In this document: piece by piece, positions 1,025 through 64,000 of the stretch
Numbering within the stretch: the first letter of the stretch is position 1
How the letters are laid out: each line of letters begins with the position of its first letter
Virus record (IMG/VR): IMGVR_UViG_3300036853_000446
Location: 248,001 to 312,000 of that record
Length of the DNA: 64,000 bases
Strand: one strand, 5' to 3'
Made by a program: the position numbers and the translations under genes
The notes under the pieces: model-generated
Told to the model about the DNA's origin: nothing
Databases searched by the model: none
The model's input: the letters and a program-made list of their open reading frames with translations, nothing else

Positions 1025-2254
1025 ATGATGACGACGAGCATGCAGCGGCACGAAACCAAGGCCGAACGACTGAGTCCTCTGGCGCCTGACCACGAGCGCA
1101 ACGCCGAAAATTATCCGAGCTGTTCGAACATCTCCGCTGGTCTCATCGGCTGGCAATTCACTCTCGTCCCAGAACGGCCGTCAGGTCCACCCGAGTACGT
1201 CCACGTCCCCGTCACCAGACCCTTCTCGTGGGGAGATGAGGAAGCGCTCAAAGTTCACCTCTTCGCGACTCGCTGGAATGCCGCCTGGGAAGCGGGACAC
1301 CTGCGATCGCAGATGTTCAATGAGAGCGATGTCCCTCGAACCCTGAAGTGGCTCGGAGATTATGACGATGTGGACTTACGCCTGATCGTCGCCGGCCGGG
1401 ACAATCCGTACCTTGCTTACGAGCCCCTGTACCATCTCCTGACTCTCGACACGTTGCACCACTGCGGACTGCCGCCTCTCAGGCGTGGCATATGGCCGTC
1501 GCTCGGCCCGATTGGAAATGCCCGTATGGGCGGCTACCTTCCGAGCGATTTCTCCCACCGACTGCAATCTGGCTTCTCCCGGCAGCTCTGGCCTCATCTC
1601 GAACGCCGACATCGAGGCTCGTATTCACCTCACGAGCCACTGGTCATGCTCTCGAACTGCCTGGATTTTTGGCTACCATACCTCGATCGAGTCGCGCAGA
1701 CCAGGCTCGGCGAATTCGAACGAGTTGCCCACGACGAAGAGTCGCTGGAGGCGCTCGAACATATCCCGGCAAACGTGAGAAAAAAGATCCGGCGTCCTCT
1801 AAAGGGCGGTGACATTTGGCACGGTGAGTTGGACGCGCAAGACGCCATGACTGAGATGGTGGAAGCCGCAGACGAGCGCGGCCGTCTGCGTGGAATTGTG
1901 GACGCCATACGGTCGAACAGGGTCGAGGACGACTTTTCAGCGCGATGGTCGAAAGCCAAGGCAGACTTCGAGCGTCGCCTCTATCACAAGCGCACTCACG
2001 TCAAGGTTTCGTTCGTAGAACTGGACGATACGATCCCCGTACACGCGCCCAACTCCGAGCCCGATGGGAATCTCATCTGGCAGGACCTACTGACGCTATG
2101 CGATCGACGGGAACGCCAAGTCGTCGTGTGTCTACGCAACGGCACCACTCGAGCGACCGATATCGCCCCGAAATTGGGCTACGCCAATCATAGTCCGGTC
2201 TCGAAGACCTTGGCTCGAATCCGAGCGAAGGTCGCCAAGCTATTCGACCTCTAG
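1025..2254 (+). CDS. protein with C-terminal sigma-70 region-4-like HTH
   Basis: C-term CDRRERQVVVCLRNGTTRATDIAPKLGYANHSPVSKTLARIRAKV; start uncertain. Confidence 0.6.
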   Translation: MMTTSMQRHETKAERLSPLAPDHERNAENYPSCSNISAGLIGWQFTLVPERPSGPPEYVHVPVTRPFSWGDEEALKVHLFATRWNAAWEAGHLRSQMFNESDVPRTLKWLGDYDDVDLRLIVAGRDNPYLAYEPLYHLLTLDTLHHCGLPPLRRGIWPSLGPIGNARMGGYLPSDFSHRLQSGFSRQLWPHLERRHRGSYSPHEPLVMLSNCLDFWLPYLDRVAQTRLGEFERVAHDEESLEALEHIPANVRKKIRRPLKGGDIWHGELDAQDAMTEMVEAADERGRLRGIVDAIRSNRVEDDFSARWSKAKADFERRLYHKRTHVKVSFVELDDTIPVHAPNSEPDGNLIWQDLLTLCDRRERQVVVCLRNGTTRATDIAPKLGYANHSPVSKTLARIRAKVAKLFDL

Positions 2255-2691
2255 CGTGAGACGACCGCGGACTTCGTGACGACCCCACGAATGCCGGCCC
2301 CCGTGATATCGATGTTGCCCGTCGCGCGGTTGTATTCGATGCGCTCGACGCCTCGGAACTTCGCTTCGACCGCCTCCCGCGTGAGCGTCTCGAGGGGCGG
2401 CGACTCGGCGCCGTTCATCCTAGTGAACGTCGCGTACCCCCGGCACCACTCGGACGGGTGCGCGTGGTGCATGCGACCGCTCGCGTACCTGACGCGGATC
2501 TCGCCCTTGCAGCCGGGGCAGGTGTCGACGAAGTCCCCCAGCGAATGGTCGCGACTGAGCCAGCGCCCCATCATGTCGAGGTAGCCGTCGGCGAGCTTGT
2601 CTCCCTTCGCAGCGCTCTGCCTTTGTGCGTTCAGATGCCTTTGTCGGCGTGCGTCGAGCTGTCGTCTGCGCTTCACGTCGTCTTTCGCCAT
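2251..2691 (-). CDS. hypothetical protein with CxxC
   Basis: ATG 2691, downstream of the array trailer; CPGC...H...C. Confidence 0.55.
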   Translation of the reverse strand: MAKDDVKRRRQLDARRQRHLNAQRQSAAKGDKLADGYLDMMGRWLSRDHSLGDFVDTCPGCKGEIRVRYASGRMHHAHPSEWCRGYATFTRMNGAESPPLETLTREAVEAKFRGVERIEYNRATGNIDITGAGIRGVVTKSAVVSR

Positions 2692-2723
2692 ATCGGTTTC
2701 GCCATCAGCGTGTCGTGAATCTT

Positions 2724-2980
2724 GTCGTGGTCTGGTGGGCTCCACGCAGCCTCTCAAATCTCTCTGCTCGCTGAGGAGGCAGCGCAACAGAACCAACGTC
2801 GTGGTCAGGTGGGCTCCACGCAGCCTCTCAAATGTCCGAGATCGCGACTTTAGGGTATGTAAATTCGTCGTGTCGTGGTCAGGTGGGCTCCACGCAGCCT
2901 CTCAAAGAAGGTGAACCCGTTGCTGTATGCCTTCGCGTCTACGAGTCGTGGTCAGGTGGGCTCCACGCAGCCTCTCAAAG
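2724..2980 (-). CRISPR. CRISPR array A1 (4 repeats, 3 spacers)
   Basis: 36-nt repeats GTCGTGGTCWGGTGGGCTCCACGCAGCCTCTCAAAK at 2724, 2798, 2872, 2945; spacers 37-38 nt; leader on the right. Confidence 0.95.
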
Positions 2981-3135
2981 ACGTAGCCTCAAAGTTCAGG
3001 CAATATAGGGCATTACGAGGCGGATTGCGAGAGGGTCGATCGTGCTCTGATTTGCCGTCGCGTAACCCTTCGATTTGCTTTGCATGGGCTGATCGAATCA
3101 CGTACTCGCTCGCCAAAGCCCCAAAGGGGCTCGGT
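2981..3135 (-). promoter_or_regulatory. conserved CRISPR leader copy 1
   Basis: Aligns with 12522-12665 and 18319-18472 (CAATATAGGGCATT, CGGATTGCGAG, GCGTAACCCTTCGATTTGCTTTGC, ATCGAATCAC, CGCTCGCC). Confidence 0.85.
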
Positions 3136-3184
3136 CGTCATTCGCAGGCGGACTCAGCGTGTGCTATGATTTATTAACTCAACC

Positions 3185-3745
3185 ATGGCCCAAACCGACA
3201 CCGTTGCCTCTCGGGTCGCCGCGCGTGTGCTCCACGCCATGGCCTATGATCGAAACGAATTCAGGAATAAGCTCGAAGAGCACATCGGTGGGGCTTACCT
3301 CGAGTTCTACAAGGCGCGGCTCGCAAGCAAGAACGGCCAAACCAAGTGGGTCAAGCACTGGCTCACGGAGGTGCGGCAGCTGCTCGATCGAAACCTCGTC
3401 GCCGCCATGCTGCACGAGATCCGCGGGTTCAAAGACCGGCGCAAGGTATATGAGCAGGTTTGTACCGCCATGAAGGCAAAGGACGCGGGCTACCGCCTGG
3501 CGGCTGAGAACACCGTGCTCCGTGACTACGGCCTTCGCAAGGTGCGCATGCTGCTAGACGATCAGGACACGACTAACTTTTGGGCCCTCGTCGAGCAGGC
3601 CGTCGACACCGGACTGGCAGGCAAGGCTGATGTCGAGCTGCAGGCACAACCCCAAGGCAAGCGCGATAAGGGCCGTGGCAAGCCGGAGAAGGGCGACAAC
3701 GGCCGTGGTAAGGGCGACAAGCGGAAGCGAGCGTCCGCTTCATGA
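3185..3745 (+). CDS. leader-adjacent hypothetical protein, paralog of 12708-13229
   Basis: Shared KLEEHIGGAYLEFYKARLA and EVRQLLDRNLV; basic C-terminal tail. Confidence 0.85.
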   Translation: MAQTDTVASRVAARVLHAMAYDRNEFRNKLEEHIGGAYLEFYKARLASKNGQTKWVKHWLTEVRQLLDRNLVAAMLHEIRGFKDRRKVYEQVCTAMKAKDAGYRLAAENTVLRDYGLRKVRMLLDDQDTTNFWALVEQAVDTGLAGKADVELQAQPQGKRDKGRGKPEKGDNGRGKGDKRKRASAS

Positions 3746-3816
3746 AGCTCAGTTGTCCTTCGACGGATCCTGGCGCGGCCGCGTCTTCTCCTTCGACGTT
3801 CGGCTCCTGTGAAGCC

Positions 3817-4299
3817 TCAGCTCGGGTTCGCGGCAAAGTCGAGAAACCCGGTAAACGGCAAGCGCGCATCCGCCGGCAGGCATTCGAACGTCCCGAGCGC
3901 TTCTCCCGCGTCGTTCCTCTTTAGGGTTGCCCTCCACGACACGTTGCCCAGCCCCCGATGCTCGCGCGTCAAGAAGGCAGCTTCTCCGTCTTCCGCGGCG
4001 AAATACACGGCGAGCGCGCGGTAGTCACGCGCCGTTTTTTTGAACAGGAATTGCAGATGGTTCGGCTCATCCCCGTCTCCGTCGACAATCAAGATCCCCC
4101 AAGGCGTCACGGGGAACGCAGGCCCACTCGGATTGTGTGTCGCGAGGCAAAAGAAGGTCGTCTTCACATCGCCATCCGACAGGAACGCCTCCCGAAGTCG
4201 AATCATCACCCACTCGTCCAGCTCCCGGATCACGGGTTCCGAGGACAGGTCGCGACCGTCAAAGGCCTCACGAAACGTAGACTTTGAAACCCCCGTCAT
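3817..4299 (-). CDS. hypothetical protein
   Basis: ORF track; start uncertain. Confidence 0.5.
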   Translation of the reverse strand: MTGVSKSTFREAFDGRDLSSEPVIRELDEWVMIRLREAFLSDGDVKTTFFCLATHNPSGPAFPVTPWGILIVDGDGDEPNHLQFLFKKTARDYRALAVYFAAEDGEAAFLTREHRGLGNVSWRATLKRNDAGEALGTFECLPADARLPFTGFLDFAANPS

Positions 4300-4438
4300 T
4301 GTGGTTACGGTTACCCCCAGGATCTGTCCGGAGTCAAGAGCAGTTCCTCTCAATGAGACCCAGCCTTCTTCAGGCCACTCAAAGGGGGACTTCCATCACC
4401 CAAGGCCAGCCAGATTCAAATTCCGAGTAGGGTCATTG

Positions 4439-4445
4439 CGGTGTA
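4439..4445 (+). promoter_or_regulatory. class-2 motif CGGTGTA
   Basis: 11 nt before ATG 4457. Confidence 0.55.
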
Positions 4446-4456
4446 GAATCGACCCA

Positions 4457-4735
4457 ATGAAAGCCAAACACCGACTCTTCCTGTCCGACAAAATTCTTCG
4501 AGTCATCGGTCCTCGAGAGGTTTCACCTCATGACGTGGCCGAGCTTTTGAGAAAGCGCGATCGGAGACACCCAACCGAACCTCCGTGGACGCCAGAGAGT
4601 AGAGCACTCGACACGTATCTTTCGCTGGTAATGGGGACATTACCCGAGCTTATGCGGGTCCGCCCAAACATGTTCAAGGCCCGGAACCCACATCATTTTC
4701 TCCGCATCGTGTCGAACGACTCAGGGAAGAGTTAG
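4457..4735 (+). CDS. small basic protein, possible winged HTH
   Basis: ILRVIGPREVSPHDVAELL; start set by class-2 motif. Confidence 0.5.
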   Translation: MKAKHRLFLSDKILRVIGPREVSPHDVAELLRKRDRRHPTEPPWTPESRALDTYLSLVMGTLPELMRVRPNMFKARNPHHFLRIVSNDSGKS

Positions 4736-4859
4736 GGTCGCGGACTTTGATAAGTTGCCTTTTTTGGGTAGGGTTCTGCGACCGACCGCACCCGTCTTGG
4801 CGTGGTCGGTTCCCTTCCCTTTGCTTTTCCCATCATTCGGTTCCATTATTTAGGTAACC

Positions 4860-5549
4860 GTGGTTACCCCAAAGGCCAATCTCGTGACCCAACGGATCGC
4901 CGCCCGCGTGGCGGCTCGAACCCTCTGGGCCATGACGAACGTCGCCCCTCGGCTCTCGGGCATCCCGAATGTCTCCATCTTCATGTCGGAGGGCACGAAC
5001 GAGGGAAAAGACCTTCAGCACGGTCCCCGCGTCAAGGTCGAAAGCCTCACCGGTCGGTTCCCCGACACCAGCGTCACTATTGGTCCAAATCCCCATGTAG
5101 TCGAGGGCGGCCCGCTTCCCGCCGACGTTTTGAAGCAAGTCATCATCTGGATCGACTTGAACCGCCCCATGCTCATGCGTCTTTGGACGTCCAAGATTGA
5201 CCAACAACAGGCGGCGTCTGCCGTCAAGAGCGTCGAGCACACCGAGCCAGTAACCTTCTTCCATCCTTCTCTCGAGGCTATCAAACGTGCCCTCTTGCCC
5301 GGCGAATTCATCACGGGCAAGCGTTCGCTTGCAAAGGCTCGCGGCCTCGACCTGGCGATCGAGGCCGGCAAAGACGAGTTCTTCGTTCACCAAGTCCTCG
5401 CCTCCGTCGGCGATCAGGTCACGCGCGGCGGGACGAGCGACGTGTGGAACGCGAGCGAACGATTGCCCGTCACGGAATCAAAGAAGTTTAAAGTCCCTGT
5501 AAAACGGCGCAAGCCGCCCGCTTCAAAGAAGCGACCATCGCGCAAATAA
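4860..5549 (+). CDS. DUF4160-like domain with C-terminal extension, paralog of 60633-61070
   Basis: GKDLQHGPRVKV...WIDLNRPMLMRLW. Confidence 0.65.
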   Translation: MVTPKANLVTQRIAARVAARTLWAMTNVAPRLSGIPNVSIFMSEGTNEGKDLQHGPRVKVESLTGRFPDTSVTIGPNPHVVEGGPLPADVLKQVIIWIDLNRPMLMRLWTSKIDQQQAASAVKSVEHTEPVTFFHPSLEAIKRALLPGEFITGKRSLAKARGLDLAIEAGKDEFFVHQVLASVGDQVTRGGTSDVWNASERLPVTESKKFKVPVKRRKPPASKKRPSRK

Positions 5550-5652
5550 ACGGCGGATTCGTCCGCGCGTGCCTCCGAGTCTGGCCCGTATTCCCTCGAA
5601 TTGCCCTACCCAAGGGCCCCGCGGCGCAAAAGGAGGTACCCTACGGGGTCAA

Positions 5653-6198
5653 ATGCCCATTCTCATTGGCCACCTGCAAATCGATCCCGACCGGATGCAC
5701 ACCATCGCGGATGCGCAGAGGGTCGTGGGCTCCACGCCCGCCAACATCACGATCGTGGGCGACGTCGAGCACTATCCCGAAACGGTCCTCGAGTACCTTC
5801 TCGTTCGGGCGCTCCGTCCCATGGTCGCCCTCGGGGCCAAGGTCGAGCGCGTGCATTACTGCCGGGAATATTTCCCTCTCCACCTTCTGACGGATCACGC
5901 ATTGGAGGTTGCCCGTACTCCCCCCGAAATGACCACCACCGAGACGACGACGCCCGAAAAGACCTACACCCTCACGCTGACCGAGAACGAGATGGCTCGC
6001 GTCATCCACTCCTTGAGCGTCGACGCCGAGTCCCTACGCGCGCTGGCGGAGCCGTTCGACAGCTACGCTCTCCAGCTGGCAGAGGCTTCCGAGGCACTCA
6101 GGGACCGCCTTCGCGAAATCGTAAAGCCCTACCGTGACCCCGTCGCTCACGTCCCCACGGACGAGCGCTGGGCCGCCGAACGCCTCCACAACCTGTGA
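5653..6198 (+). CDS. hypothetical protein (internal promoter and in-frame ATG at 5929)
   Basis: ORF track; class-1 motif inside the ORF. Confidence 0.55.
   Translation: MPILIGHLQIDPDRMHTIADAQRVVGSTPANITIVGDVEHYPETVLEYLLVRALRPMVALGAKVERVHYCREYFPLHLLTDHALEVARTPPEMTTTETTTPEKTYTLTLTENEMARVIHSLSVDAESLRALAEPFDSYALQLAEASEALRDRLREIVKPYRDPVAHVPTDERWAAERLHNL
5892..5920 (+). promoter_or_regulatory. class-1 ECF-like promoter
   Basis: GGATCAC-N-CCCGTACTC, ATG 5929. Confidence 0.7.
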
Positions 6199-6358
6199 GG
6201 AGCGGCGCGCGGGGGGAAGGCCGTTCACGGTCATCCCCCCGTTCGCGCTCGGCACTACACCTGTCTCTGACCCACTTTGACAAATCCAAAGCGATTTCTG
6301 TACCGTCTCGAGAGCCTTGGCGTGCCGCGTCGAGACCCAGGTGTTACTCTCACCTACC

Positions 6359-6814
6359 ATGGCTCTCAACACCGACGATCCAACAGAAACTAAACTCCGG
6401 AGCCTCGTGCTCGTCTCAAAAGATCGGGGCTCAGAAGACCTGGGCATGGGCTCTGTCGTAAACGCTGACCCGTCGCTCGTGCACCTCGGAGACGCGAGTG
6501 TACACCCCGCTGCGATTACCGAGGTCCGCATCGAGCGGTTCTGCGAGAAATACCAGGTGACGACATACGATTTGAGGACACTGGTGTCTGCTGGCTGGTG
6601 CACCTCGATTGGCACACGGTGGGGGGTTTTCCCTTCCGTTTGCATGAAATGCGGGCAGCCACCGCGCCAAGACGTCCACGAGATTCTCCGTCCCAAGACC
6701 CCCCACGGGGAGAAGGACCTCCGCGGCTGGACGCACCTGCACTGCGCGATCCATTGGTCCGAGAAGGCCAAGAGGCTGCATGATCAGGTCGAGCGCCTAA
6801 TCGCCGACGATTGA
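6359..6814 (+). CDS. hypothetical protein with CxxC...HxxC
   Basis: CMKC...HLHC. Confidence 0.55.
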   Translation: MALNTDDPTETKLRSLVLVSKDRGSEDLGMGSVVNADPSLVHLGDASVHPAAITEVRIERFCEKYQVTTYDLRTLVSAGWCTSIGTRWGVFPSVCMKCGQPPRQDVHEILRPKTPHGEKDLRGWTHLHCAIHWSEKAKRLHDQVERLIADD

Positions 6815-6822
6815 CGCGCCAC

Positions 6823-6852
6823 GGATCAAATGCCCGGGGCCCTCCCGTACTC
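6823..6852 (+). promoter_or_regulatory. class-1 ECF-like promoter
   Basis: GGATCAAA-N-CCCGTACTC, ATG 6858. Confidence 0.75.
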
Positions 6853-6857
6853 TCGCC

Positions 6858-7019
6858 ATGATCCATCTCTCAAACCTTCCGGCGGAAGAAATCACGATCG
6901 TGGCATACGTTGGCCTTCTGCTCATGGGCGAGTTCATCAAACCCAAGACCAGGCCCGTGCAGATCACATTCGCGCTTCTGGCACCACTCGCAATACTCGT
7001 CCTTTGGTTCGTCAAATGA
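6858..7019 (+). CDS. 53-aa membrane protein (2 hydrophobic segments)
   Basis: ITIVAYVGLLLMG and ITFALLAPLAILVLWFV; ATGA overlap with next gene; not in ORF track. Confidence 0.6.
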   Translation: MIHLSNLPAEEITIVAYVGLLLMGEFIKPKTRPVQITFALLAPLAILVLWFVK

Positions 7020-7312
7020 TCGCCTCCAAAGTCGCCGAGACCGAAACGTCCGACTTATCTGCCGTCGCGCATGAAGCCCTGTGCAGTCAACGCTGGGAAA
7101 TCGCCGCCGAGTTGCTCGACGCGCTCTTGGCTCGTGACGACGATTACGTAGGCGTGCCCTTCATGGGCCGGTACGCTGGCGCCCCCGATTTCATCGGGGC
7201 CCGCATCGTGGCCGTCAACGAGGCCGTCCGGCGCAACAACGACCGGGATCTCTTGCGAGTCGAGCTTGAAATCGAACAGCAAGAGGCCTCGAAGAGCGAG
7301 CGAAACGAATGA
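7016..7312 (+). CDS. hypothetical protein
   Basis: ATGA-coupled at both ends. Confidence 0.6.
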   Translation: MIASKVAETETSDLSAVAHEALCSQRWEIAAELLDALLARDDDYVGVPFMGRYAGAPDFIGARIVAVNEAVRRNNDRDLLRVELEIEQQEASKSERNE

Positions 7313-7596
7313 ACGTCGATAAGGTCATGTCTTACGCTCACGATCGCCACGGGCTTCTAGGCGATTTGGAAGGGCCCGGGTCGTTCGAGGCCGAGACGGC
7401 TCGTAGCGTCCGCTCGCTTCTCGAGCGTGGCTTCATCGAGCGGCGCGAGCGCACCGTCGTCATCGACCGCAGCTCGTACGGCGGCAACTGGACCGAGATG
7501 CAGCCGGTTGGCCCGACCACGATCGTCACGTGGCACCTGACGGACGCCGGTCGCGAACACTGGCTGAAGCTTCCGGTCAACGAACGCTCAGCGTAA
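7309..7596 (+). CDS. small winged-HTH-like protein
   Basis: RSVRSLLERGFIE...WHLTDAGR. Confidence 0.6.
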   Translation: MNVDKVMSYAHDRHGLLGDLEGPGSFEAETARSVRSLLERGFIERRERTVVIDRSSYGGNWTEMQPVGPTTIVTWHLTDAGREHWLKLPVNERSA

Positions 7597-7604
7597 ACGA
7601 GGCG

Positions 7605-7634
7605 GGATCAAACCTCCCCAGCCCGCCCGTATTC
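7605..7634 (+). promoter_or_regulatory. class-1 ECF-like promoter
   Basis: GGATCAAA-N-CCCGTATTC, ATG 7646. Confidence 0.75.
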
Positions 7635-7645
7635 CCCACGACACC

Positions 7646-7945
7646 ATGAAAAGCACTCTCGATTCGATTCAGGTTTTGGCCGCGCTCGACAACAGCACGC
7701 TCAGCGTCAAAGGCCTCGCGGAGAAGCTCACGGGCGACTCGACCAGCGAGACCGAGCGCGAGGTGGCCGATACCCTCTCGCTCCTCATCGACCAGGACAT
7801 GGTTCGAGCGTTTGAGGCCCACGGCGTGACCTGGTACGAGACGGCTGAGGCACCTCTCGTCCCGCGCCCCTCTCCCAAGCTCGACGCAGGCTACGCCGAC
7901 GAGGATCCGGGCGACGGTCGACCCGACCGCCTCTATGGCAACTGA
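7646..7945 (+). CDS. small winged-HTH-like protein
   Basis: LSVKGLAEKL...EVADTLSLLIDQDMV. Confidence 0.6.
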   Translation: MKSTLDSIQVLAALDNSTLSVKGLAEKLTGDSTSETEREVADTLSLLIDQDMVRAFEAHGVTWYETAEAPLVPRPSPKLDAGYADEDPGDGRPDRLYGN

Positions 7946-8214
7946 TTTTCGGAGCGGGTGCTTCAGCCCCGCTCAAGGGGAACCCCATGCTTTGGGTCGC
8001 GCAGCACGTGCAGCGCTGTGACCAGCCGATCGAGGACTTCGTCCCTATCGGTGGGCGGGAGCCGATCCATAATCCGGACCACGTGGTCAACCGCTTCGTT
8101 GACGGCACGATCGGCAGCCGTATCGGGCGGCAGGTCTTCATCATCATCCATCGCCCGTGATTGTATCCAAAAACTAGTGCCCTGAGCCATAGCCTTTGGC
8201 GTATATTGCCGGGC

Positions 8215-8634
8215 ATGGACTTGCTCGCAGTCGTAAAGAACGGCCGGATCGTCCTCGATGAAGCCACGGATCTCCCCGAAGGGACCGTAGTCGAACTCGG
8301 TGTCTATTACCCGGGGACGATCGCGTCCGACGCAGTCGGGTTCCTCCCTACGCCGCTGCAGCCGGCCGTGAGCACCATCTATAACCTTCGGCAAGCGCTC
8401 ACGGACGGCAAAACGGACATGGCGGCCTTCTACCGCGAACAGCTCGTCTCCGACCTGAACGGGGCTGAAGTCCTGCCCCTCTTGACCGTCGATGTTGCCC
8501 CGGCCCTTCGACAGCTGCTTCGTGCACCGGCGACCGATATTCGTCGACAGGATCTCGCGGCGCTCGAGCTGGCCTTGTTCGACGCCCGATTGCCCGATGC
8601 TGACGAGTCGTCCATCGACACTCCGATGTACTAG
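8215..8634 (+). CDS. antitoxin-like N-terminal domain protein
   Basis: AVVKNGRIVLDEATDLPEGTVVEL resembles DUF104/AF2212-type antitoxins. Confidence 0.5.
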   Translation: MDLLAVVKNGRIVLDEATDLPEGTVVELGVYYPGTIASDAVGFLPTPLQPAVSTIYNLRQALTDGKTDMAAFYREQLVSDLNGAEVLPLLTVDVAPALRQLLRAPATDIRRQDLAALELALFDARLPDADESSIDTPMY

Positions 8635-8682
8635 GCCCACCGCTTGACCCGACCGCAACCGAGTCGCTATGGGGACTGAGGC

Positions 8683-8892
8683 ATGATCAAAAAGCGCATC
8701 ATCAACGGCAAGCTCGTAGATCTCTCAGCACTCATCCCCGAGGGCTGGGTCAAGGCATTCCGGGAGGCCGAATGCAGCGTCTGCCACGAGACGGTCCAGG
8801 AGCATTTCGAGCGCTGCCTTTATTGCGGCTCGCCGATCGACGCTTTGATGTTTCCGCCCGAGGAGCCGTCCCCCGGTACGCCGACGAACTAG
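8683..8892 (+). CDS. small zinc-ribbon protein
   Basis: CSVC...CLYC; RBS GAGG. Confidence 0.6.
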   Translation: MIKKRIINGKLVDLSALIPEGWVKAFREAECSVCHETVQEHFERCLYCGSPIDALMFPPEEPSPGTPTN

Positions 8893-8910
8893 ACCTGCTC
8901 GGAGGGGCCT

Positions 8911-9573
8911 TCAGGTCCCGTCTCGTCCGTCGTCGTCTTTCGCGAGCGTTTCGCCGTGTTTCAAGTAGCCATGCTGCCGCAGGTAAGCCTCGAATCTCGC
9001 CTCTCGCTCTTCGGGAGTCAGAGACGCGGCGTTCTTACCGGCAGCGGTCGCTTCCTCGAGCATCTCGAAGAGCTGCCGATGGGGCGTCTCGACGATCTGG
9101 GAATCGTTCATGTAGAACGGCAGATCGAGGTCGGCGTTCGCGATGCGTCGCCCTAGCTCGAAGCTGACGAAGGCATCGAGAGCCTCGGAGAGGCCGGGGG
9201 GCAGCGGTCGAACGCGAGAGAGCTGTGAACTCATGAAGCCAAGCGCCCCCGGTGGGAGCCTGCCCGCCGCGTCGAGCACCCGACGGTCTTCCAAGGTTGC
9301 GATCTGTTCGGTGAGCTTTTCGCAAAAGTTGAGCTTGTGCTCGAGAACCCGCTTCTCGCTTTGGGACTCTTCAATGATAGCTCGCAGCCGAGTCCTCTCG
9401 TTCTCGAGCGCGTTCTTTTCGTCGAACACCGTTTTGAGTTTGCGTTCGATTTCCTGCACCGACCGCTCGATGCCCGCGACTTTCCGGGCAAATGACTGAC
9501 GTATCTCGGCTGGCTCGGGGGCCTCTTCACCGCATCGCTGGCATTTCATGATTTGGCCTTTCGCTTTGGTCAT
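8911..9573 (-). CDS. coiled-coil hypothetical protein
   Basis: CQRC followed by heptad-rich segment. Confidence 0.6.
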   Translation of the reverse strand: MTKAKGQIMKCQRCGEEAPEPAEIRQSFARKVAGIERSVQEIERKLKTVFDEKNALENERTRLRAIIEESQSEKRVLEHKLNFCEKLTEQIATLEDRRVLDAAGRLPPGALGFMSSQLSRVRPLPPGLSEALDAFVSFELGRRIANADLDLPFYMNDSQIVETPHRQLFEMLEEATAAGKNAASLTPEEREARFEAYLRQHGYLKHGETLAKDDDGRDGT

Positions 9574-10015
9574 TGGCTTCGCGTCGGCTTTGTCACGCGC
9601 CCCTCAGGGCCTCGAGGGCGAGCCGCGCCCGGTCAGCGATGATGCCCGCCGGTTGGTCCGCCTTCACCGTTACGAGCCACGTAATGGCTTTCTCGACCCG
9701 TTGTCGGCAGCCTTTTAGACTTGCCTCCAGCTCCAGGCACCGGGCCTCGAGATCGACCGCGTTCTCACCGTTTGCAATCATGTCGAAGCCGAGCAGTCTG
9801 CGCCCTTGGTACGAGCGCGTCAAACTCGCCCTTCAGGTTCGGCCTTTCGACCGCACCACCATCATTCAACGGGCTCGAGGCCGGCGGTTGGTAACGCAAA
9901 TCAGCAACGCTCATTGGCGGTTGTCACTCGACCCATCGATAGCGGCATCCATTTCTTGCCGTCATTAGTTTAAGCTCATCGCCGCGCGCCGGAACAACCG
10001 CCGTCCCACGACCGC

Positions 10016-10462: not shown

Positions 10463-10535
10463 CCGGCCGATCCTGGCGCGATTCGATTCCCGATTCGTGT
10501 CCCATCGATCGGCGGCTCCGCTCTATAATCCCGCC

Positions 10536-10907: not shown

Positions 10908-10920
10908 GGACCCGGTCGCG

Positions 10921-11409: not shown

Positions 11410-11424
11410 TGCCCTCAGGCCCGA

Positions 11425-11730: not shown

Positions 11731-11773
11731 CCCGAGGGCCATTCGGGTGGGCTCCGATCGCTGGAATCGTCAG

Positions 11774-12521
11774 GTCGTGGTCTGGCCTCTTAACTCGAAA
11801 GACGAGCCGTCGTTGATGGGGACATGCGCTGAGTCGTGGTTGGGTGGGCTCCACGCAGCCTCTCAAATGGTATCGAGGAGGACGTCCTTCTCGCTGAACC
11901 GTCGTGGTCTGGTGGGCTCCACGTAGCCTCTCAAATCCACCAGGACGGACAAGCGTCCCGAGTAGTCGGCGTGTCGTGGTTGGGTGGGCTCCACGCAGCC
12001 TCTGAAATCGTCGGGCGAATCGTGTCTCATGCCGACAAGGTACTCGTCGTGGTCGGGTGGGCCCCACGCAGCCTCTCAAATCCGTTGAGAGAAGTAGTGA
12101 CCACTCGGTGTGGGATCTCGTCGTGGTCTGGTGGGCTCCACGCAGCCTCTCAAATTTTTCCTAAGGAGCGAGCCGGCGAACTATCCTCCCCGTCGTGGTC
12201 GGGTGGGCCCCACGCAGCCTCTCAAATCAAGATACCGCTGGTGCGAGACATTGGTGATACGTGGTCGTGGTTAGGTGGGCTCCACGCAGCTTCTCAAAAT
12301 CCATGACGGCGTCAGCGGTTGGTGAGGGTCATCCTCAAGTCGTGGTTGGGTGGGCTCCACGCAGCCTCTCAAATCAGCCGCTCAAATTACGCACCTCGCC
12401 ACGCTGGTTCCGTCGTGGTCAGGTGGGCTCCACGCAGCCTCTCAAATTCTTGTAATCGCCTGCGAGCCGTCCAGCCGCGGGTTGCGTCGTGGTCTGGTGG
12501 GCTCCACGCAGCCGCTCAAAT
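11774..12521 (-). CRISPR. CRISPR array A2 (10 repeats plus 1 internally deleted trailer repeat)
   Basis: Repeats at 11833, 11901, 11973, 12046, 12120, 12192, 12264, 12339, 12412, 12486; degenerate copy 11774-11794. Confidence 0.97.
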
Positions 12522-12665
12522 TTCGTAGCCTTAAAGTTCAGTCAATATAGGGCATTGCAACGCGGATTGCGAGGGGGTCGTTTATGAGCTGGTTTGCTCG
12601 CGCGTAACCCTTCGATTTGCTTTGCGTCGGTTGATCGAATCACCTTCCCGCTCGCCAAAGCCCCA
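12522..12665 (-). promoter_or_regulatory. conserved CRISPR leader copy 2
   Basis: Aligns with the other two leaders. Confidence 0.85.
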
Positions 12666-12707
12666 GAGTCGTCAGTCGCAGGTGTGCTACCCTTCGTTAA
12701 GGCCCCA

Positions 12708-17550: not shown

Positions 17551-18318
17551 ATCGTGGTCTGGTAAGGCTCCATACAGCCTCGCGAATAAGTTCACAGCTT
17601 GAAAGGTCAAGGACAGATCGGGTTGTCGTGGTTGGGTGGGCTCCACGCAGCCTCTCAAATCGGTCGCCTTTGACACGGGCATACTCATATCATGCTGCCA
17701 GTCGTGGTTGGGTGGGCTCCACGCAGCCTCTCAAATCCGAGCACCACCGCGTCGCGACGCGGAAGGTAGTGGGGTCGTGGTTGGGTGGGCTCCACGCAGC
17801 CTCTCAAATCGCAAGCCAAGGATGCACGTGCTACGGACGACCGCGTGTCGTGGTTGGGTGGGCTCCACGCAGCCTCTCAAATCAAGCTGGCGGAAGCTGC
17901 CGTTGACCACTCTTCTATCGTCGTGGTCGGGTGGGCTCCACGCAGCCTCTCAAATCTGAACCTCGAGTGGATGCTTAATGGACCGCTCATCGTCGTGGTC
18001 GGGTGGGCTCCACGCAGCCTCTCAAATCCAATGCGCGACGAGGCTCGTCACCTGCGTCGGATTGTCGTGGTTGGGTGGGCTCCACGCAGCCTCTCAAATT
18101 CGCCTCGAAGCAGTCGGCACTCGTATCGGATGCGCACGTCGTGGTCGGGTGGGCTCCACGCAGCCTCTCAAATTCTGCGCCTGCAGGTGCGGGCTACCGA
18201 TCACAGTGGCGTCGTGGTCGGGTGGGCTCCACGCAGCCTCTCAAATCCGTCAAGTCCTCGGCCCCGAGACGGAGGTTGTGCTGTCGTGGTCGGGTGGGCT
18301 CCACGCAGCCTCTCAAAT
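17551..18318 (-). CRISPR. CRISPR array A3 (10 repeats plus 1 degenerate trailer repeat)
   Basis: Repeats at 17625, 17701, 17774, 17847, 17920, 17992, 18064, 18138, 18211, 18283; degenerate copy 17551-17587. Confidence 0.97.
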
Positions 18319-18472
18319 CTGTAGCCATAAAGTCCAGGCAATATAGGGCATTGCAAGGCGGATTGCGAGAGGGTCATTTACGAGCTGGTTTGTTCGCGCG
18401 TAACCCTTCGATTTGCTTTGCGTGAACTATCGAATCACCTTCGCGCTCGCCGAAGCCCAGAGGGGCTTCGGC
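18319..18472 (-). promoter_or_regulatory. conserved CRISPR leader copy 3 with distal hairpin
   Basis: Aligns with other leaders; perfect GCCGAAGCCC-AGAG-GGGCTTCGGC at 18449-18472. Confidence 0.85.
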
Positions 18473-42159: not shown

Positions 42160-43602
42160 ATGGCAAAGAGGAAGTCAAAGACGACGAGTGTCCAGCCCGG
42201 TGAAGTGCTGAAGGGGTTTCGCGTCAAACTCAGACCGACCCAGGAGGATCTGCGTTACCTATCGACGGCTCAAGTCGAGCTGATGACGATGTGGAACATC
42301 CTCGTGATAACGTGGAAGACGCACGTCGATTACTGCGTTCGGCATTGCGAGGACCTCGGGCTCATCGGACCCGTACCGCCACGACCGACCTCGGACCAAG
42401 ACACGAACGTGCCCGAAGAGATCGCCGAATGGGAGGAGTACGCGGCACTCTGCCGTGAACGCCGCCGAAGCGCTCGCGAGCAGTGTAAGACCGTCGAGGG
42501 TCTGACACGGCGCGACTGGGCGAATCGAGCCCTCGATTACCACCAACTTGATCTCACGGAGAAGGCTCGAGAGCAGACGCAGATCGATTACCGCGTCCTG
42601 CGGTCCGCCGTGAAGGGCGTCACGACGGCCCATATGGCCCAGGCCGTCATCGAGACTTACAAGGCGTCATTGCAGAAAGGGCGGCCGCCACCGAAGCTCA
42701 AGAGACGCCCGCTCGAGATGCCTCTCTTGCTTCGCAGCGGTAAGGATTTGCTTACGCTTTCAGCGAACCACTCCACCCGAACGACGGCGTCCGGGAAGAA
42801 GCGGCTCACCGGCTCCCACCACTGCATCGTCAAGTTTGGCCCGCTCAAGATCGGGGGACGATTCAACCGCCCGCCGTCGGGTCCCTTCCTCCAGGGCATT
42901 TCGATCGGGCTCGAGAAGGACGGCTGGTACGCCTCCGCGAAGGTCCGGACCCTACCTGAGGATCTGCCGAAGCCAACGAAGGAAATCATCGCGATCAACC
43001 CGGGACTCGAATGCCTCTACGCCGACAATGAGGGTTATGTGATCGAGAACCCACGGGGCAACGCTTACTCCCTCCGGATGCGCGAGATGAGCGATTGGAT
43101 CGACGACGCCGAAACCCAGTGGGACGAAGCCCACCGTCGCAACCATCAAGCTCGATATGCCGAGCGTTTCGCGCGGCACACGGAGGACCTCATCTACAGC
43201 CGCATCCTCCCGAAGCTCGCCGATTACGAGACGATTCTCATCGGCAAGGCCGGCAAAACCGCCGCTCAAGGTCGACAAAACCGCATCAGTAAGAACGACG
43301 AGGGCGGCTACGTTTCGGCCATGAGCTTGATGCAGCAGCTCATCATCCAGAGGTATGGCCTCTATGACCCCGACGAGAATCCGACGGGGCGAGTGCGAGT
43401 GCTGGAGTCCATGGGAATTTCCCGGAGGTGCTCGCGTTGCGGAACCGAGCACGCAACCCGTTATCAACGCAACAATTTACGCCGGTATGACCAACAGACC
43501 GATTGCCAGGAACCCTCGTGTCGGCTCAAGATACACGTCGATGTTGGCGCCGCTCGCAACCTGCTTTCCAACTATCGGGATTTGCAGGCGGCAGCAGAAT
43601 GA
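42160..43602 (+). CDS. compact type V (TnpB/Cas12-like) effector with inactivated RuvC, 480 aa
   Basis: TnpB-like GFRVKLRPT, PKLKRR, GWYAS; RuvC-I IIAINPG (D->N), RuvC-II TILIGK (E->G), Zn finger CSRC...CQEPSC, RuvC-III HVDVGAARNL; RBS GAGGGG; array 2 nt downstream. Confidence 0.88.
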   Translation: MAKRKSKTTSVQPGEVLKGFRVKLRPTQEDLRYLSTAQVELMTMWNILVITWKTHVDYCVRHCEDLGLIGPVPPRPTSDQDTNVPEEIAEWEEYAALCRERRRSAREQCKTVEGLTRRDWANRALDYHQLDLTEKAREQTQIDYRVLRSAVKGVTTAHMAQAVIETYKASLQKGRPPPKLKRRPLEMPLLLRSGKDLLTLSANHSTRTTASGKKRLTGSHHCIVKFGPLKIGGRFNRPPSGPFLQGISIGLEKDGWYASAKVRTLPEDLPKPTKEIIAINPGLECLYADNEGYVIENPRGNAYSLRMREMSDWIDDAETQWDEAHRRNHQARYAERFARHTEDLIYSRILPKLADYETILIGKAGKTAAQGRQNRISKNDEGGYVSAMSLMQQLIIQRYGLYDPDENPTGRVRVLESMGISRRCSRCGTEHATRYQRNNLRRYDQQTDCQEPSCRLKIHVDVGAARNLLSNYRDLQAAAE

Positions 43603-43604
43603 CC

Positions 43605-44869
43605 CTCAGAACGGCAGCGTGGTGCCTACCCTCCCACGACGAGGAGTTCGGTGGCCGCGCGCGATGATGTGCAAGACCTCAGAACGGCAGCGTGGTGCCT
43701 ACCCTCCCACGACACGAGGTCGGAAAGAGTCTCAATCTCGGCAATCTCACGCTCAGAACGGCAGCGTGGTGCCTACCCTCCCACGACGACCTGCGGAAGA
43801 AGGGCCTTCGCCGATCTACTTGGGCTCAGAACGGCAGCGTGGTGCCTACCCTCCCACGACGAAGTGACGTCTACCAATTGGGCTTGGTCCTCTATCACTC
43901 AGAACGGCAGCGTGGTGCCTACCCTCCCACGACTTATGGGGATGAACCGAGAACCAGCCTCGATCGATGTCTCAGAACGGCAGCGTGGTGCCTACCCTTC
44001 CACGATAGCCGCGTCCTCCAAACTGCCGAATCGATTCCGAAACTCAGAACGGCAGCGTGGTGCCTACCCTCCCACGACGGCATCTCCACTCGTTCCCTCG
44101 TCCTCCGGGTATGGACCTCAGAACGGCAGCGTGGTGCCTACCCTCCCACGACTACGGCTGGCGGTCCCCCGCCAAACGAGGTTGGCGTGCTCAGAACGGC
44201 AGCGTGGTGCCTACCCTCCCACGACGAAACATCACGCGCCTGGGCAACAGCATCAGCGTCGCCATCTCAGAACGGCAGCGTGGTGCCTACCCTCCCACGA
44301 CCAACGACATGACCCCGTGGAACCTGTGAGCTTGCTCGGCGCTCCTCGGAACGGCAGCGTGGTGCCTACCCTCCCACGACGGAAAGACTCGTTCGTGATC
44401 CCGAGTCGACCCCCATGCTCAGAACGGCAGCGTGGTGCCTACCCTTCCACGACGAGGAGTTCGGTGGCCGCGATGGTGATGCGCAAGCCCTCAGCATGGC
44501 AGCGTGGTGCCTACCCCTCCACGACTTCGAGCAACACGTCAACGCGCGTATTGGCTCGTTCAGCCTCAGAGTGGCAGCGCGGTGCCTACCCTTCCGCGAC
44601 ACGTCCCCCAGTTAGCGGAAAGCCTCGGTACTGGTCTCAGAATGGCAGCGTGGTGCCTACCCTTCCACGACCACATCCGTGGATAGAGAGTCCCCCTCCG
44701 GAGTCAACCTCAGAACGGCAGCGTGGTGCCTACCCTTCCACGACTTTCCGATCTCGTTAAAGTAGATGCGGACTTATGGCAGCGTGGTGCCTACCCTTCC
44801 ACGACGTGCACGGGTCTTCTCAAAGAAAGACGCCTCAGAACGGCAGCGTGGTGCCTACCATTCCACGAC
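43605..44869 (+). CRISPR. CRISPR array B (18 repeats, 17 spacers)
   Basis: 36-nt CTCAGAACGGCAGCGTGGTGCCTACCCTYCCACGAC at 43605, 43678, 43752, 43825, 43898, 43971, 44043, 44117, 44190, 44266, 44345, 44418, 44490, 44565, 44636, 44709, ~44770 (5'-degenerate), 44834; decay increases away from the gene. Confidence 0.98.
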
Positions 44870-45902: not shown

Positions 45903-45975
45903 GACTGCGACTACACCGCCGGGCTCTTGTTCTGATTTTTGGTTTGACTTATGCTGCACGGGCTCTTCTCGGCGC

Positions 45976-46160
45976 GGTTGAGAGGCTGCGTGGAGCCCAC
46001 CCAACTACGACGGTATCATTCGGCTTTTTATCAGGTCCCCCGATCCGGAGTAACTTGCGAGGCTGCGTGGAGCCCACCCAACTACGATATGCCCGTGCCG
46101 ACGTGGCGCTTCCAAGAAAGGTACATTTGAGAGGCTGCGTGGAGCCCATCACACCACGAC
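45976..46160 (+). CRISPR. CRISPR mini-array A4 (3 family-A repeats)
   Basis: Repeats at 45976, 46053, 46125 in the ATTTGAGAGG...CCACGAC orientation. Confidence 0.9.
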
Positions 46161-46250
46161 TTGCTTGGATCGTTGACTTGATAGGTTTTCAACCCTGATG
46201 ACAGGCTTGCACCGATGAACCCGGTTGGCTCGACCCCAAACCCGGGTAAC

Positions 46251-46286
46251 GATGAAATGGCAGCGTGGTGCCTACCCTTCCACGAC
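46251..46286 (+). repeat. orphan family-B CRISPR repeat
   Basis: GATGAAATGGCAGCGTGGTGCCTACCCTTCCACGAC, 3' 28 nt match repeat B. Confidence 0.85.
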
Positions 46287-63167: not shown

Positions 63168-63636
63168 GTTGGGTCGTAACGCCCTCTTGTGGGACGTTCC
63201 CCGAATAACCTACGAGGCGTTCTTCGCCGTGCACTCGATACAGCCAAAGAACCCAGGATGGGTCTTCGGCGAGTTGAGCCAGCTTCGCGGAGTCAACGAA
63301 GCGATCGCAGTGAGCGCAGCGCCGGAGACGAGTCCGTCCTTTGGCCTCCGCGGGATGCGGAAAGCCCCGCCGGTCTCGAGTCTTGTGCCCGGGGCACTCG
63401 GGGCAGCAGGCGTCGGGTCCATGGTGCGGGCAGGTCACGGCAGCTTTTACACCGCCAGGGCGCGGGCACGAGCGGTGTCGTTCCGCTGAGATTTCGCAGG
63501 GGCGTTCGCAATTTCCGACACAGCAGGTGCAGCCTCACTTCAGCGCCTAAATTCATGACCTTTCGGGTCGACAAACTGACTGCCAAAAATGCTCGTCTCG
63601 GTATACAATTCCCTTTGAAATCGATGACGAAAAACC

Positions 63637-63786
63637 ATTTCAGAGGCTGCGTGGAGCCCGCCCAACCACGACTCATTCAATCGGCAGAACTTGGTTCAAA
63701 TATGAAGGGCTGCGTGGAGCCCACCCAACCACGACAAGATTCACGACACGCTGTGAGAGGCCGCGTGGAGCCCACCCAACCACGAC
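63637..63786 (+). CRISPR. CRISPR mini-array A5 (3 family-A repeats, short spacers)
   Basis: Repeats at 63637, 63700, ~63751; spacers 27 and 15-18 nt; AT-rich upstream with TACAAT at 63604-63609. Confidence 0.9.
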
Positions 63787-64000
63787 AAGCACCAGGATCA
63801 CTTTGTCCAGCTGAGCCGCCGGAGTAGTTCCCGGTGGCCCAGGCGACGGCCTCCCGGAGGCTTCGCGCGCTTCATTTCTTCGCGGCCTTCCTCTGGCGGT
63901 ATTTGACGACGTCGGCGGCGACCTTCTCCTGCTCGACGCCGAACATGTCGGCGACGAACCCGACGGTCACGTAGCTGTGGACCATCTCGGGATCCAAGGC

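What the first reader, a model, noticed from the sequence alone, without database searches (positions are those of the whole stretch)
2706..2723. The same 18-nt guide follows a repeat in two arrays 61 kb apart
Seen: AAGATTCACGACACGCTG follows the terminal repeat of array A1 (minus strand, 2723-2706) and the second repeat of mini-array A5 (63736-63753). Identity stops after 18 nt, about the length of a mature type V guide. Inference: a conserved guide under selection for a fixed target, or a shared ancestral trailer spacer. In A1 it also lies in the 5' UTR of gene 2251-2691.
Basis: seen in the sequence. Interest (0 to 1): 0.65.

Follow-up and report, generated by a model that had tools for sequence, protein, structure and literature searches.

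The report
Duplicated 18-nt guide, nuclease-dead mini-Cas12
The same 18-base guide sits behind a CRISPR repeat at two places 61 kb apart on a 407-kb mobile element whose small Cas12-like protein appears unable to cut DNA, so it is probably one RNA guide encoded twice for a DNA-binding (silencing) system, but its target was not found.

Summary
AAGATTCACGACACGCTG follows the terminal repeat of array A1 (2706-2723, minus strand). It also lies between repeats 2 and 3 of mini-array A5 (63736-63753, plus strand).

The window is part of a 407,634-bp IMG/VR contig. It carries six arrays of one repeat family and a single 480-aa TnpB/Cas12f-fold effector (42160-43602). In that effector RuvC-I Asp is Asn and RuvC-II Glu is lost, in all 12 family members found. 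It is probably a binding-only type V system.

Identity ending near 18 nt recurs. Two A4 spacers share only their first 19 nt. Two units of a relative's array share 17 nt. Another relative's array ends in an 18-nt spacer. I read ~18 nt as the working guide length, and the A1/A5 pair as one handle-plus-guide unit kept in two transcription units.

A fixed target is not shown. Repeat+18-mer occurs in no other public sequence. The bare 18-mer hits databases at chance frequency, as control queries confirmed. No target lies on the element.

A neutral relic of one old spacer remains a serious rival.

The parts
2706..2723 (-). 18-mer, copy 1: guide position after the terminal repeat of array A1
2724..2981 (-). 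Array A1: 4 'a'-type repeats and 3 spacers of about 37 nt. The terminal repeat is 2724-2760 (variant ..CCAGACC..).
2982..3150 (-). Leader of A1. It is conserved with the leaders of A2 and A3 and shares the motif CTCGCAA..GCCT, then TATATT, with relatives' leaders. The promoter is inferred.
2251..2691 (-). 146-aa ORFan gene (GC3 0.80). Its ATG is 15 nt downstream of the 18-mer, and no terminator-like site lies between it and the array.
63580..63609 (+). Sigma-70-like promoter match about 27 nt upstream of A5
63636..63786 (+). Mini-array A5: 3 repeats (63636-63672, 63699-63735, 63750-63786). The 5' 9 nt are degenerate and the 3' 28-nt handle is conserved. Spacers are about 26 nt and 14-18 nt. 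Repeat 3 has a C.A mismatch in the stem.
63736..63753 (+). 18-mer, copy 2: the whole short spacer between A5 repeats 2 and 3
63857..63880 (+). Terminator-like hairpin plus T-run about 70 nt after A5. It may equally serve the convergent gene.
42160..43602 (+). 480-aa TnpB/Cas12f-fold effector. RuvC-I D->N (AINPG), RuvC-II E lost (ILIGKAG), RuvC-III D kept. Predicted nuclease-dead.
43604..44869 (+). Array A4: 18 'b'-type repeats starting 2 nt after the effector's stop codon. The stem carries a compensatory change (GGCA..TGCC against GGCT..AGCC). The last units have short spacers (24 and 27 nt).
43641..43659 (+). First 19 nt of A4 spacer 1, identical to the first 19 nt of spacer 12 (44454-44472). 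The remaining parts match 11/16 with one indel.
11833..12522 (-). Array A2: 10 'a' repeats. Beyond it lies a repeat lacking the stem-loop, then 18 nt, then a repeat remnant (about 11740-11800).
17551..18319 (-). Array A3: 10 'a' repeats plus one degenerate terminal repeat
45975..46286 (+). Mini-array of 3 'a' repeats (45975-46160) and a solitary 'b' repeat (46250-46286)

Best explanation
The 18-mer is the guide part of one crRNA unit (a 28-nt repeat handle plus an ~18-nt guide) that is present in two separate transcription units of a multi-array miniature type V system whose effector cannot cut DNA. One copy is the last unit of the leader-driven array A1. The other is the middle unit of the stand-alone mini-array A5, which has its own promoter-like site. 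Both transcripts would be processed into crRNAs with the same guide and loaded on the 480-aa RuvC-inactivated effector. That complex would bind a matching DNA site and block transcription or replication, as Cas12m and Cas12c do. The two copies descend from one ancestral spacer. Identity ends at 18 nt because only about the first 17-19 nt of a spacer are used and constrained in this family. The target is not on the element, so it should be in the host or in a rival mobile element. Shown: the duplication, its position, array polarity, the conserved and covarying handle, the loss of catalytic residues, and the recurrence of 17-19-nt shared prefixes. Inferred: expression, processing, guide length, binding without cleavage, selection on the guide, and the existence of a target.
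For: (1) The position directly after an intact handle is identical in both copies. (2) Polarity: A1-A3 share a leader of about 150 nt with a motif also present in relatives' leaders; A4 and the relatives' arrays begin right after the effector gene in the same orientation. (3) The handle is functional RNA. Its 4-bp stem is 97% paired over 25 distinct units, with 14 double-sided changes; 0 of 500 shuffles reach this, and slid controls give 30-59% pairing. The 5' 9 nt are free to vary. (4) The effector has the TnpB/Cas12f fold (Z 17.1 to ISDra2 TnpB). All 12 family members have N at RuvC-I and lack the RuvC-II E, while the 26%-identical outgroup P0014 keeps D/E/D. (5) Guide length of about 18 nt: A4 spacers 1/12 share 19 nt, then differ at 5 of 16 positions plus an indel (all six differences falling in the last 17 of 36 positions has p of about 0.01). 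L009 units at 6784 and 6907 share 17 nt, then are unrelated. The L081 array ends with an 18-nt spacer. L079 has spacers of 12-15 nt. (6) The 18-mer is 18/18 identical while the 37-nt repeats in front of it differ at 5 positions; at equal rates p is about 0.07. (7) A5 looks like a compact unit of promoter-like site, 3 units and terminator-like hairpin. (8) Precedent: nuclease-dead Cas12f systems with fixed and even duplicated guides (PMC13472631), and binding-only V-M and V-C systems (PMC12669027, PMC11013384).
Against: No relative carries the guide, so there is no evidence of conservation between elements. No target was identified. The 18-mer has 21 distinct genomic contexts in 596 Gb against about 17 expected by chance. 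Control 18-20-mers hit the viral collection just as often. A5 also looks partly decayed: repeat 3 has a stem mismatch, the 5' parts are degenerate and the spacers are truncated. The guide-versus-repeat conservation test is weak (p of about 0.07) and is confounded by repeat homogenisation within arrays. Nothing here shows expression or processing. The TAM/PAM is unknown.
Confidence: 0.45

Rival explanations
1. Neutral relic. One old trailer-end spacer was copied by recombination or duplication between arrays and truncated by deletions. A5 is a decaying array remnant. The shared 18 nt have no present function and are simply young enough not to have diverged.
For: Array modules did duplicate: A1-A3 share leaders, and A1 and A2 share a paralogous upstream gene at 66% identity. 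Distal array ends here are generally decayed: the A2 remnants, the A3 degenerate repeat and the short A4 end units. A5 repeat 3 has a broken stem pair. The A5 junction ...GCTG|TG|AGAGG fits a microhomology deletion that removed the spacer's 3' half and 4 nt of the next repeat. No target and no conservation were found.
Against: It does not explain why three other pairs or units in two elements also stop at 17-19 nt. It does not explain why the handles before both copies are intact. It does not explain the 18/18 identity next to repeats that differ at 5 of 37 positions.
Confidence: 0.33
2. Self-regulation, CreTA-like. Effector loaded with the A5 (or A1) guide binds the DNA at 2706-2723. That site lies between array A1 and the ATG of ORFan gene 2251-2691. 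Binding would block read-through from the A1 leader, so the gene is expressed only when the effector or guide is lost.
For: The site is the only match to the A5 guide on the 407-kb contig. It lies 15 nt before the ATG, with no terminator-like site between array and gene. Mini-arrays that repress neighbouring genes are known (10.1101/2023.03.03.530964).
Against: The site's 5' flank is the repeat end itself, as for every spacer in every array. A TAM that allowed binding here would make all crRNAs bind their own arrays. The gene has no homologue in the one search made and no recognisable toxin or regulator domain. The other A5 guides have no match in the window.
Confidence: 0.08
3. Immune spacer against a rival phage. 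The guide derives from a protospacer in a tailed phage like IMGVR_UViG_3300033475_000068 and serves inter-element competition.
For: There is an exact 18-nt match inside a 185-aa ORF of that 41.6-kb phage. With the A5 flanks it extends to 21 nt (C + 18 + TG). The third A5 guide matches 13 of its first 14 nt elsewhere in the same contig (p of about 0.02, post hoc). The contig is a real phage with terminase, protease and tape measure genes.
Against: One such 18-mer hit is expected by chance. Of the five control queries, three also gave exactly one outside hit, one of them in a 29% GC phage. The extension uses bases that belong to the repeats. The phage is about 50% GC by eye (not computed) against 60% for the element. 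No full-length spacer hits the 34.5 kb of that phage held here. The G3 mismatch lies at seed position 5.
Confidence: 0.08
4. Homing guide of an RNA-guided transposon or integrating element, like the short delocalized crRNA of V-K CASTs.
For: The spacer is short, the repeat is atypical, the effector is nuclease-dead, and the unit lies outside the main arrays. This matches the anatomy of CAST homing guides (PMC11656645).
Against: No TnsB, TnsC or TniQ-like domain was found in the 25 distinct ORFs scanned with Pfam. The only recombinase seen is a large serine recombinase. The element ends are not in the window, and no adjacent target was found.
Confidence: 0.03

Closest known systems
Binding-only type V systems of plasmids and phages (Cas12m / V-M; Cas12c / V-C; predicted V-O and V-P)
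   Same: A small TnpB-derived effector next to CRISPR arrays on a mobile element, with expected interference by binding rather than cutting (PMC12669027, PMC11013384, PMC11656645). No anti-repeat was seen, so it is probably tracrRNA-independent.
   Different: There is no sequence-level match to Cas12m; the fold match is only Z 11-12 at 10-12% identity, weaker than to TnpB or Cas12f. Two of three RuvC residues are replaced here. There are six arrays, two repeat variants and short-guide units.
crRNA-like regulatory mini-arrays (crlRNA; CreA of CreTA; tracr-L)
   Same: A stand-alone mini-array with degenerate repeats, a short spacer and its own promoter-like site (10.1101/2023.03.03.530964).
   Different: Those guides are partly complementary to a promoter inside the same locus and are conserved among relatives. 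Here there is no in-locus target apart from the other copy of the guide, and no conservation could be shown.
Nuclease-dead Cas12f (dCas12f-sigmaE) and TldR RNA-guided transcription factors
   Same: Dead TnpB/Cas12f-fold proteins with hard-wired guides. Identical guides encoded more than once are reported, and so are CRISPR-array-associated dCas12f variants (PMC13472631).
   Different: dCas12f proteins are C-terminally truncated and linked to rpoE or HTH genes. This effector keeps the zinc finger and RuvC-III, is inactivated by point substitutions, and sits beside long arrays with leaders. The fold match to dCas12f is Z 11.
Delocalized short homing crRNA of type V-K CASTs
   Same: A short spacer behind an atypical repeat outside the main array, used by a nuclease-dead Cas12 (PMC11656645).
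   Different: No Tn7-like genes were detected, and no target next to an element end.

Membership tests
Type V CRISPR-Cas (TnpB-derived single effector plus array) | Effector with the TnpB/Cas12 fold (WED, REC, RuvC, zinc finger) | tested here: met
   AF2 model with pLDDT 76. Foldseek E 6e-12 to TnpB and Cas12f. VIA Z 17.1 to 8exa and 13-14 to AsCas12f. The Pfam TNB and NCBIfam TnpB matches are below their cut-offs.
Type V CRISPR-Cas (TnpB-derived single effector plus array) | CRISPR array adjacent to the effector, with the guide 3' of the repeat handle | tested here: met
   A4 starts 2 nt after the stop codon. The same layout is seen in L009, L081, L082 and L008. The conserved, covarying 3' part of the repeat abuts the spacer.
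Type V CRISPR-Cas (TnpB-derived single effector plus array) | Intact RuvC catalytic triad D-E-D | tested here: not met
   RuvC-I N280 is nearly invariant and the RuvC-II E is replaced by G/S/D/A in all 12 members. The outgroup P0014 has D/E/D. I therefore file it as an inactivated variant.
Subtype V-M (Cas12m) | Effector homologous to Cas12m | tested here: not met
   There is no Cas12m hit in the phmmer or profile searches of PDB sequences. The fold match of Z 10.7-11.9 ranks below TnpB and Cas12f.
Subtype V-F (Cas12f) | tracrRNA with an anti-repeat; active RuvC | tested here: not met
   No opposite-strand match to the 18-nt repeat core at up to 3 mismatches next to any array, which is a limited test. 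RuvC is inactivated. Rfam finds nothing.
Subtypes V-O / V-P (predicted inactivated type V) | Effector belongs to those families | not testable with these tools
   The classification paper gives no sequences that I could read. PDB chains named Cas12o1 and Cas12p match at Z 9.4 and 13.2 only, and that naming may not correspond to these subtypes.
crRNA-like regulatory mini-array (crlRNA) | Stand-alone, degenerate repeats outside the main array | tested here: met
   A5 lies 17 kb from the nearest other array. Its 5' repeat parts are degenerate and it has its own promoter-like site.
crRNA-like regulatory mini-array (crlRNA) | Spacer partly complementary to a promoter of a cas or cargo gene in the locus | tested here: not met
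   There is no anchored seed match of 9 nt or more for any A5 guide in the window except the A1 copy. There is no second 18-mer match on the 407-kb contig. The rest of the contig was not scanned for partial matches.
crRNA-like regulatory mini-array (crlRNA) | Conservation of the unit in related loci | tested here: inconclusive
   No relative has the guide. However, no close relative of this element (over 71% effector identity) exists in the collections.
V-K CAST delocalized homing crRNA | Tn7-like tnsB, tnsC and tniQ next to a dead Cas12 | tested here: not met
   No such domains were found in the 25 distinct ORFs scanned with Pfam, parts of that set also with PHROGs and NCBIfam. Small ORFs were not scanned.
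dCas12f-sigmaE / TldR | Operon with rpoE or an HTH gene; C-terminal truncation of RuvC | tested here: not met
   The C-terminal zinc finger and RuvC-III are present. No sigma-factor domain was found in the ORFs scanned, but the ORFs directly upstream of the effector (about 41.3-42.0 kb) were not scanned. One relative (L079) has an HTH_3 gene upstream.

The most novel reading that the evidence does not exclude
A family of CRISPR-associated, RuvC-dead mini-Cas12 proteins on giant mobile elements works with ~18-nt guides. Besides ordinary arrays, it keeps hard-wired minimal units (28-nt handle plus ~18-nt guide) that are copied between arrays as units and maintained in several copies. This would be a natural multi-copy CRISPRi guide set aimed at a host or rival-element gene. 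The A1/A5 18-mer would be one such guide. The sharp end of identity at the mature-crRNA boundary might even mean that the units spread by a crRNA-sized copying step rather than by ordinary spacer acquisition.
Probability: 0.15. Interest if true: 0.75.

Novelty: new variant of a known kind. Interest (0 to 1): 0.55.

Why it matters
If the reading holds, this element gives a compact (about 450-480 aa), naturally nuclease-dead, apparently tracrRNA-free DNA binder with a short guide and a simple 28-nt handle. It would also be an example of a mobile element that hard-wires one guide in two differently driven transcripts next to adaptive arrays. That would link adaptive, binding-only type V systems (V-M-like) with fixed-guide RNA-guided transcription factors (TldR, dCas12f). 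It would also give a natural readout of working guide length. If the relic reading holds, the finding is an ordinary trace of array duplication and decay.

Tried and rejected
1. Target on the element. All spacers and A5 guides were compared with the window (blastn-short and anchored 9-nt seeds). Only the A1/A5 and A4 sp1/sp12 pairs appear. The viral scan shows no third copy on the 407-kb contig.

2. Target elsewhere. Exact 18-mer scans gave 28 loci in genomes and 37 in metagenomes. None follows a repeat, the contexts are diverse coding regions, and the number is near expectation. One Bradyrhizobium-type gene matches 22 nt with the A1 flank, and phage L002 matches 21 nt with the A5 flank. With about 45 distinct hits, both extensions are expected by chance.

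3. TAM/PAM from other spacers. Four leader-proximal 19-20-mers and A5 guide 1 were scanned in viral contigs. There were only single hits without extension. Arrays compared with annotated plasmids and phages gave nothing. No TAM could be derived.

4. Second hit in the candidate phage. I fetched 34.5 of its 41.6 kb. Only a 13/14 anchored match of A5 guide 3 was found. The last look-ups failed or returned no DNA.

5. Is the sequence after the A1 18-mer a decayed repeat, which would make A1 a copy of repeat-18mer-repeat? Local alignment against shuffles gave p = 0.21, and 37% of control windows scored as high. Rejected.

6. Close relatives of the element. Megablast against plasmids and phages found nothing. 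The viral collection holds only the source contig.

7. Function of gene 2251-2691. No Pfam or PHROG hit, only a weak NCBIfam match far below its cut-off (E 0.002, 17.6 bits against a cut-off of 172.1), and no homologue in the protein search.

8. Rfam and tRNA scans of the window found nothing.

Full report
**Observation**

The 18-mer AAGATTCACGACACGCTG occurs exactly twice in the window, at 2706-2723 (-) and 63736-63753 (+). No near-matches appear, and none appeared in shuffles. In both places it begins right after the 3' end of a repeat (...ACCACGAC). In A1 it follows the fourth and last repeat and is followed by ATGGCG.... In A5 it fills the whole interval between repeat 2 and the recognisable start (TGAGAGG) of repeat 3. 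Among about 60 guide starts in the window, only this pair (18 nt) and A4 spacers 1/12 (19 nt) share a prefix of 7 nt or more.

**Where it is**

Pattern scans place the window at positions 248001-312000 of IMGVR_UViG_3300036853_000446, a contig of 407,634 bp. Every hit to the 'a'-type repeat core (the one pattern scanned) lies inside the window. The window is 60.5% G+C. It has no close relative among annotated plasmids or phages.

Most of its ORFs are dark matter. Recognisable genes are a large serine recombinase, a ParB-like protein and a helicase-like 843-aa protein. A relative of the effector lies on a contig with type IV secretion genes. I therefore call the element a giant mobile element rather than a phage.

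**The system**

There are six arrays:
- A1: 2724-2981, minus strand, 4 repeats.
- A2: 11833-12522, minus strand, 10 repeats plus remnants.
- A3: 17551-18319, minus strand, 10 repeats plus 1 degenerate repeat.
- A4: 43604-44869, plus strand, 18 repeats.
- A mini-array at 45975-46160, plus a solitary repeat at 46250-46286.
- A5: 63636-63786, plus strand, 3 repeats.

A1-A3 share a leader of about 150 nt. A motif in it (CTCGCAA..GCCT, followed by TATATT) recurs in the leaders of two relatives. This fixes transcription of A1 towards the 18-mer.

A4 starts 2 nt after the stop codon of the only effector candidate, at 42160-43602. That protein has 480 aa counted from the internal ATG. Its AlphaFold model (pLDDT 76) has the TnpB/Cas12f fold: Foldseek E 6e-12; VIA Z 17.1 to ISDra2 TnpB, 13-14 to AsCas12f, and 11-12 to Cas12m and dCas12f. 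At sequence level only weak TnpB/Cas12f zinc-finger similarity remains.

The protein search found twelve relatives at 52-74% identity (one, P0013, is a 276-aa fragment) and one outgroup at 26%. In the alignment of the effector with eleven of these relatives and the outgroup, every family member has Asn where the outgroup has the RuvC-I Asp. All have lost the RuvC-II Glu. The RuvC-III Asp and the zinc finger are kept. The effector is therefore most likely a binding-only protein. Such inactivation is a known, repeated trend in type V (PMC12669027).

**The repeat**

I aligned 25 distinct units from the window and five relatives. The 3' 28 nt are conserved: a 4-bp stem, a 6-nt loop, and a tail ending CCACGAC. 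The 5' 9 nt are free to vary. The stem covaries (UA, AU, GC, CG and UG at the fourth pair). It is 97% paired, with 14 double-sided changes; 0 of 500 shuffles reach this, and slid controls give 30-59% pairing.

The 'b' repeats of A4 differ from the 'a' repeats elsewhere by exactly such a compensatory change. A relative's array mixes both stem types behind one effector. One effector can therefore plausibly serve all arrays. No anti-repeat was seen and Rfam finds nothing.

**Why identity stops at 18 nt**

The same pattern recurs independently:
- A4 spacers 1 and 12 share their first 19 nt. Their remaining parts match only 11/16, with an indel. The chance that all six differences fall in the last 17 of 36 positions is about 0.01.
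- In relative L009, two units of one array share 17 nt directly after the handle and are then unrelated.
- In L081, the array ends with an 18-nt spacer followed by a 5'-truncated repeat and then a gene start.
- L079 has spacers of 12-15 nt.
- The distal end of A2 holds 18 nt between two repeat remnants.

I infer that roughly the first 17-19 nt of a spacer are what the effector uses and what selection sees. A5 fits this. Its handles are kept, the 5' repeat parts are degenerate, and the spacers are cut to about 26 nt and 14-18 nt. It also has a promoter-like site and a terminator-like hairpin of its own.

**Target and conservation**

This is the weak side of the case.

- *No relative carries the guide.* Repeat+18-mer exists nowhere else in the viral, genome or metagenome collections. 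The relatives' arrays hold nothing similar at 4 mismatches.
- *The bare 18-mer is at chance frequency.* It occurs in 28 genome loci, which is 21 distinct contexts against about 17 expected for 596 Gb, and in 37 metagenome loci. All are in unrelated, mostly coding contexts.
- *Extended matches are expected by chance.* The two extended matches are the 21-nt match in a phage contig and the 22-nt match in a Bradyrhizobium-type gene. With about 45 distinct hits, both are expected by chance.
- *Control queries behave the same way.* I scanned the viral collection with five other 18-20-mers taken from guides. Three gave exactly one outside hit without extension, one of them in a 29% G+C phage.
- *The candidate phage gives little more.* I hold 34.5 of its 41.6 kb. 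It has one further weak anchored match (13/14) to A5 guide 3. I record this as a curiosity.
- *No TAM could be derived.* No spacer matched annotated plasmids or phages.

**The neighbouring gene**

The ATG of ORF 2251-2691 (146 aa, GC3 0.80) lies 15 nt after the 18-mer, and no terminator-like site lies between. The 18-mer would thus be in its 5' UTR if the gene is read from the A1 leader. The protein has no family match and no homologue.

A CreTA-like block of read-through is conceivable. It would need a TAM equal to the repeat end, and that would make every crRNA bind its own array. The sequence after the 18-mer is not a decayed repeat.

**Verdict**

The best reading (0.45) is one ancestral handle-plus-guide unit, kept in two transcription units of a nuclease-dead miniature type V system. 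The working guide length is about 18 nt, and the unit directs binding to an unknown target off the element.

The main rival (0.33) is a functionless relic of array duplication and decay. Minor rivals are self-regulation of gene 2251-2691 (0.08), an anti-phage spacer (0.08) and a homing guide (0.03).

In kind, it is a new variant of known things: crRNA-like mini-arrays (10.1101/2023.03.03.530964), binding-only type V systems (PMC11013384, PMC12669027), and fixed or duplicated guides of dCas12f (PMC13472631). I could not place the effector family in any named subtype with the tools at hand.

Noticed in passing
window 42160-43602 (+): The only Cas12-like gene of the window encodes a 480-aa TnpB-fold protein with RuvC-I D->N and RuvC-II E lost. 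Both changes are conserved in 12 homologues from metagenomes (52-74% identity). Only 13 relatives were found among 5.8 billion proteins.
   Followed up: yes
window 43604-44869 versus 2724-18319 and 63636-63786: There are two repeat variants on one element that differ by a compensatory stem change (GGCA..TGCC against GGCT..AGCC). The relative L009 (6482-6966) mixes four stem variants in one short array behind the effector.
   Followed up: yes
window 49341-52297 (+); L077 6237-9205: An 843-aa helicase-like protein (weak DEAD/ResIII matches and a C-terminal HTH/HNH-like part) with an overlapping 147-aa ORF is 61-65% identical to a pair lying directly upstream of the effector in relatives L077 and L078. 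It may be a partner of the system, or this may only be synteny of related elements.
   Followed up: partly
window 3185-3745 (+) and 12594-13229 (+): Paralogous genes (66% identity over 186 aa, no family match) sit divergently upstream of the A1 and A2 leaders. Gene-leader-array modules were therefore duplicated. The function is unknown.
   Followed up: partly
window 2683-2705 (-): The 9-nt direct repeat ATGGCGAAA occurs twice, 14 nt apart, right after the 18-mer. The first ATG opens a 10-codon uORF and the second opens the 146-aa ORF. It may be a junction scar.
   Followed up: no
window 11740-11800 (-): The distal end of A2 holds a repeat whose stem-loop is deleted, then 18 nt, then a remnant (GGAGCCCACCCGA..) of another repeat. 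This is another short-spaced pair at an array end.
   Followed up: partly
L086 4766-4779 (= L085 15563-15576): The first 14 nt of A5 guide 3 match 13/14, and the match is preceded by C, inside the SMC-like gene of the same 41.6-kb phage contig that holds the 18-mer. Post hoc p is about 0.02. The mismatch is at position 5.
   Followed up: partly
L081 2397-2441; L079 8417-8542: In relatives, arrays next to the effector end in, or consist of, very short spacers (18 nt, and 12-15 nt) between 5'-truncated repeats. In L081 the last remnant runs straight into a downstream gene with a Shine-Dalgarno site.
   Followed up: partly
window 58843-60420 (+); 34097-35092 (+): A large serine recombinase (Resolvase + Recombinase + Zn ribbon domains; PHROG integrase E 2e-89) and a ParB-like protein. 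Both are consistent with an integrating or partitioning mobile element. No virion genes were seen in the ORFs scanned.
   Followed up: no
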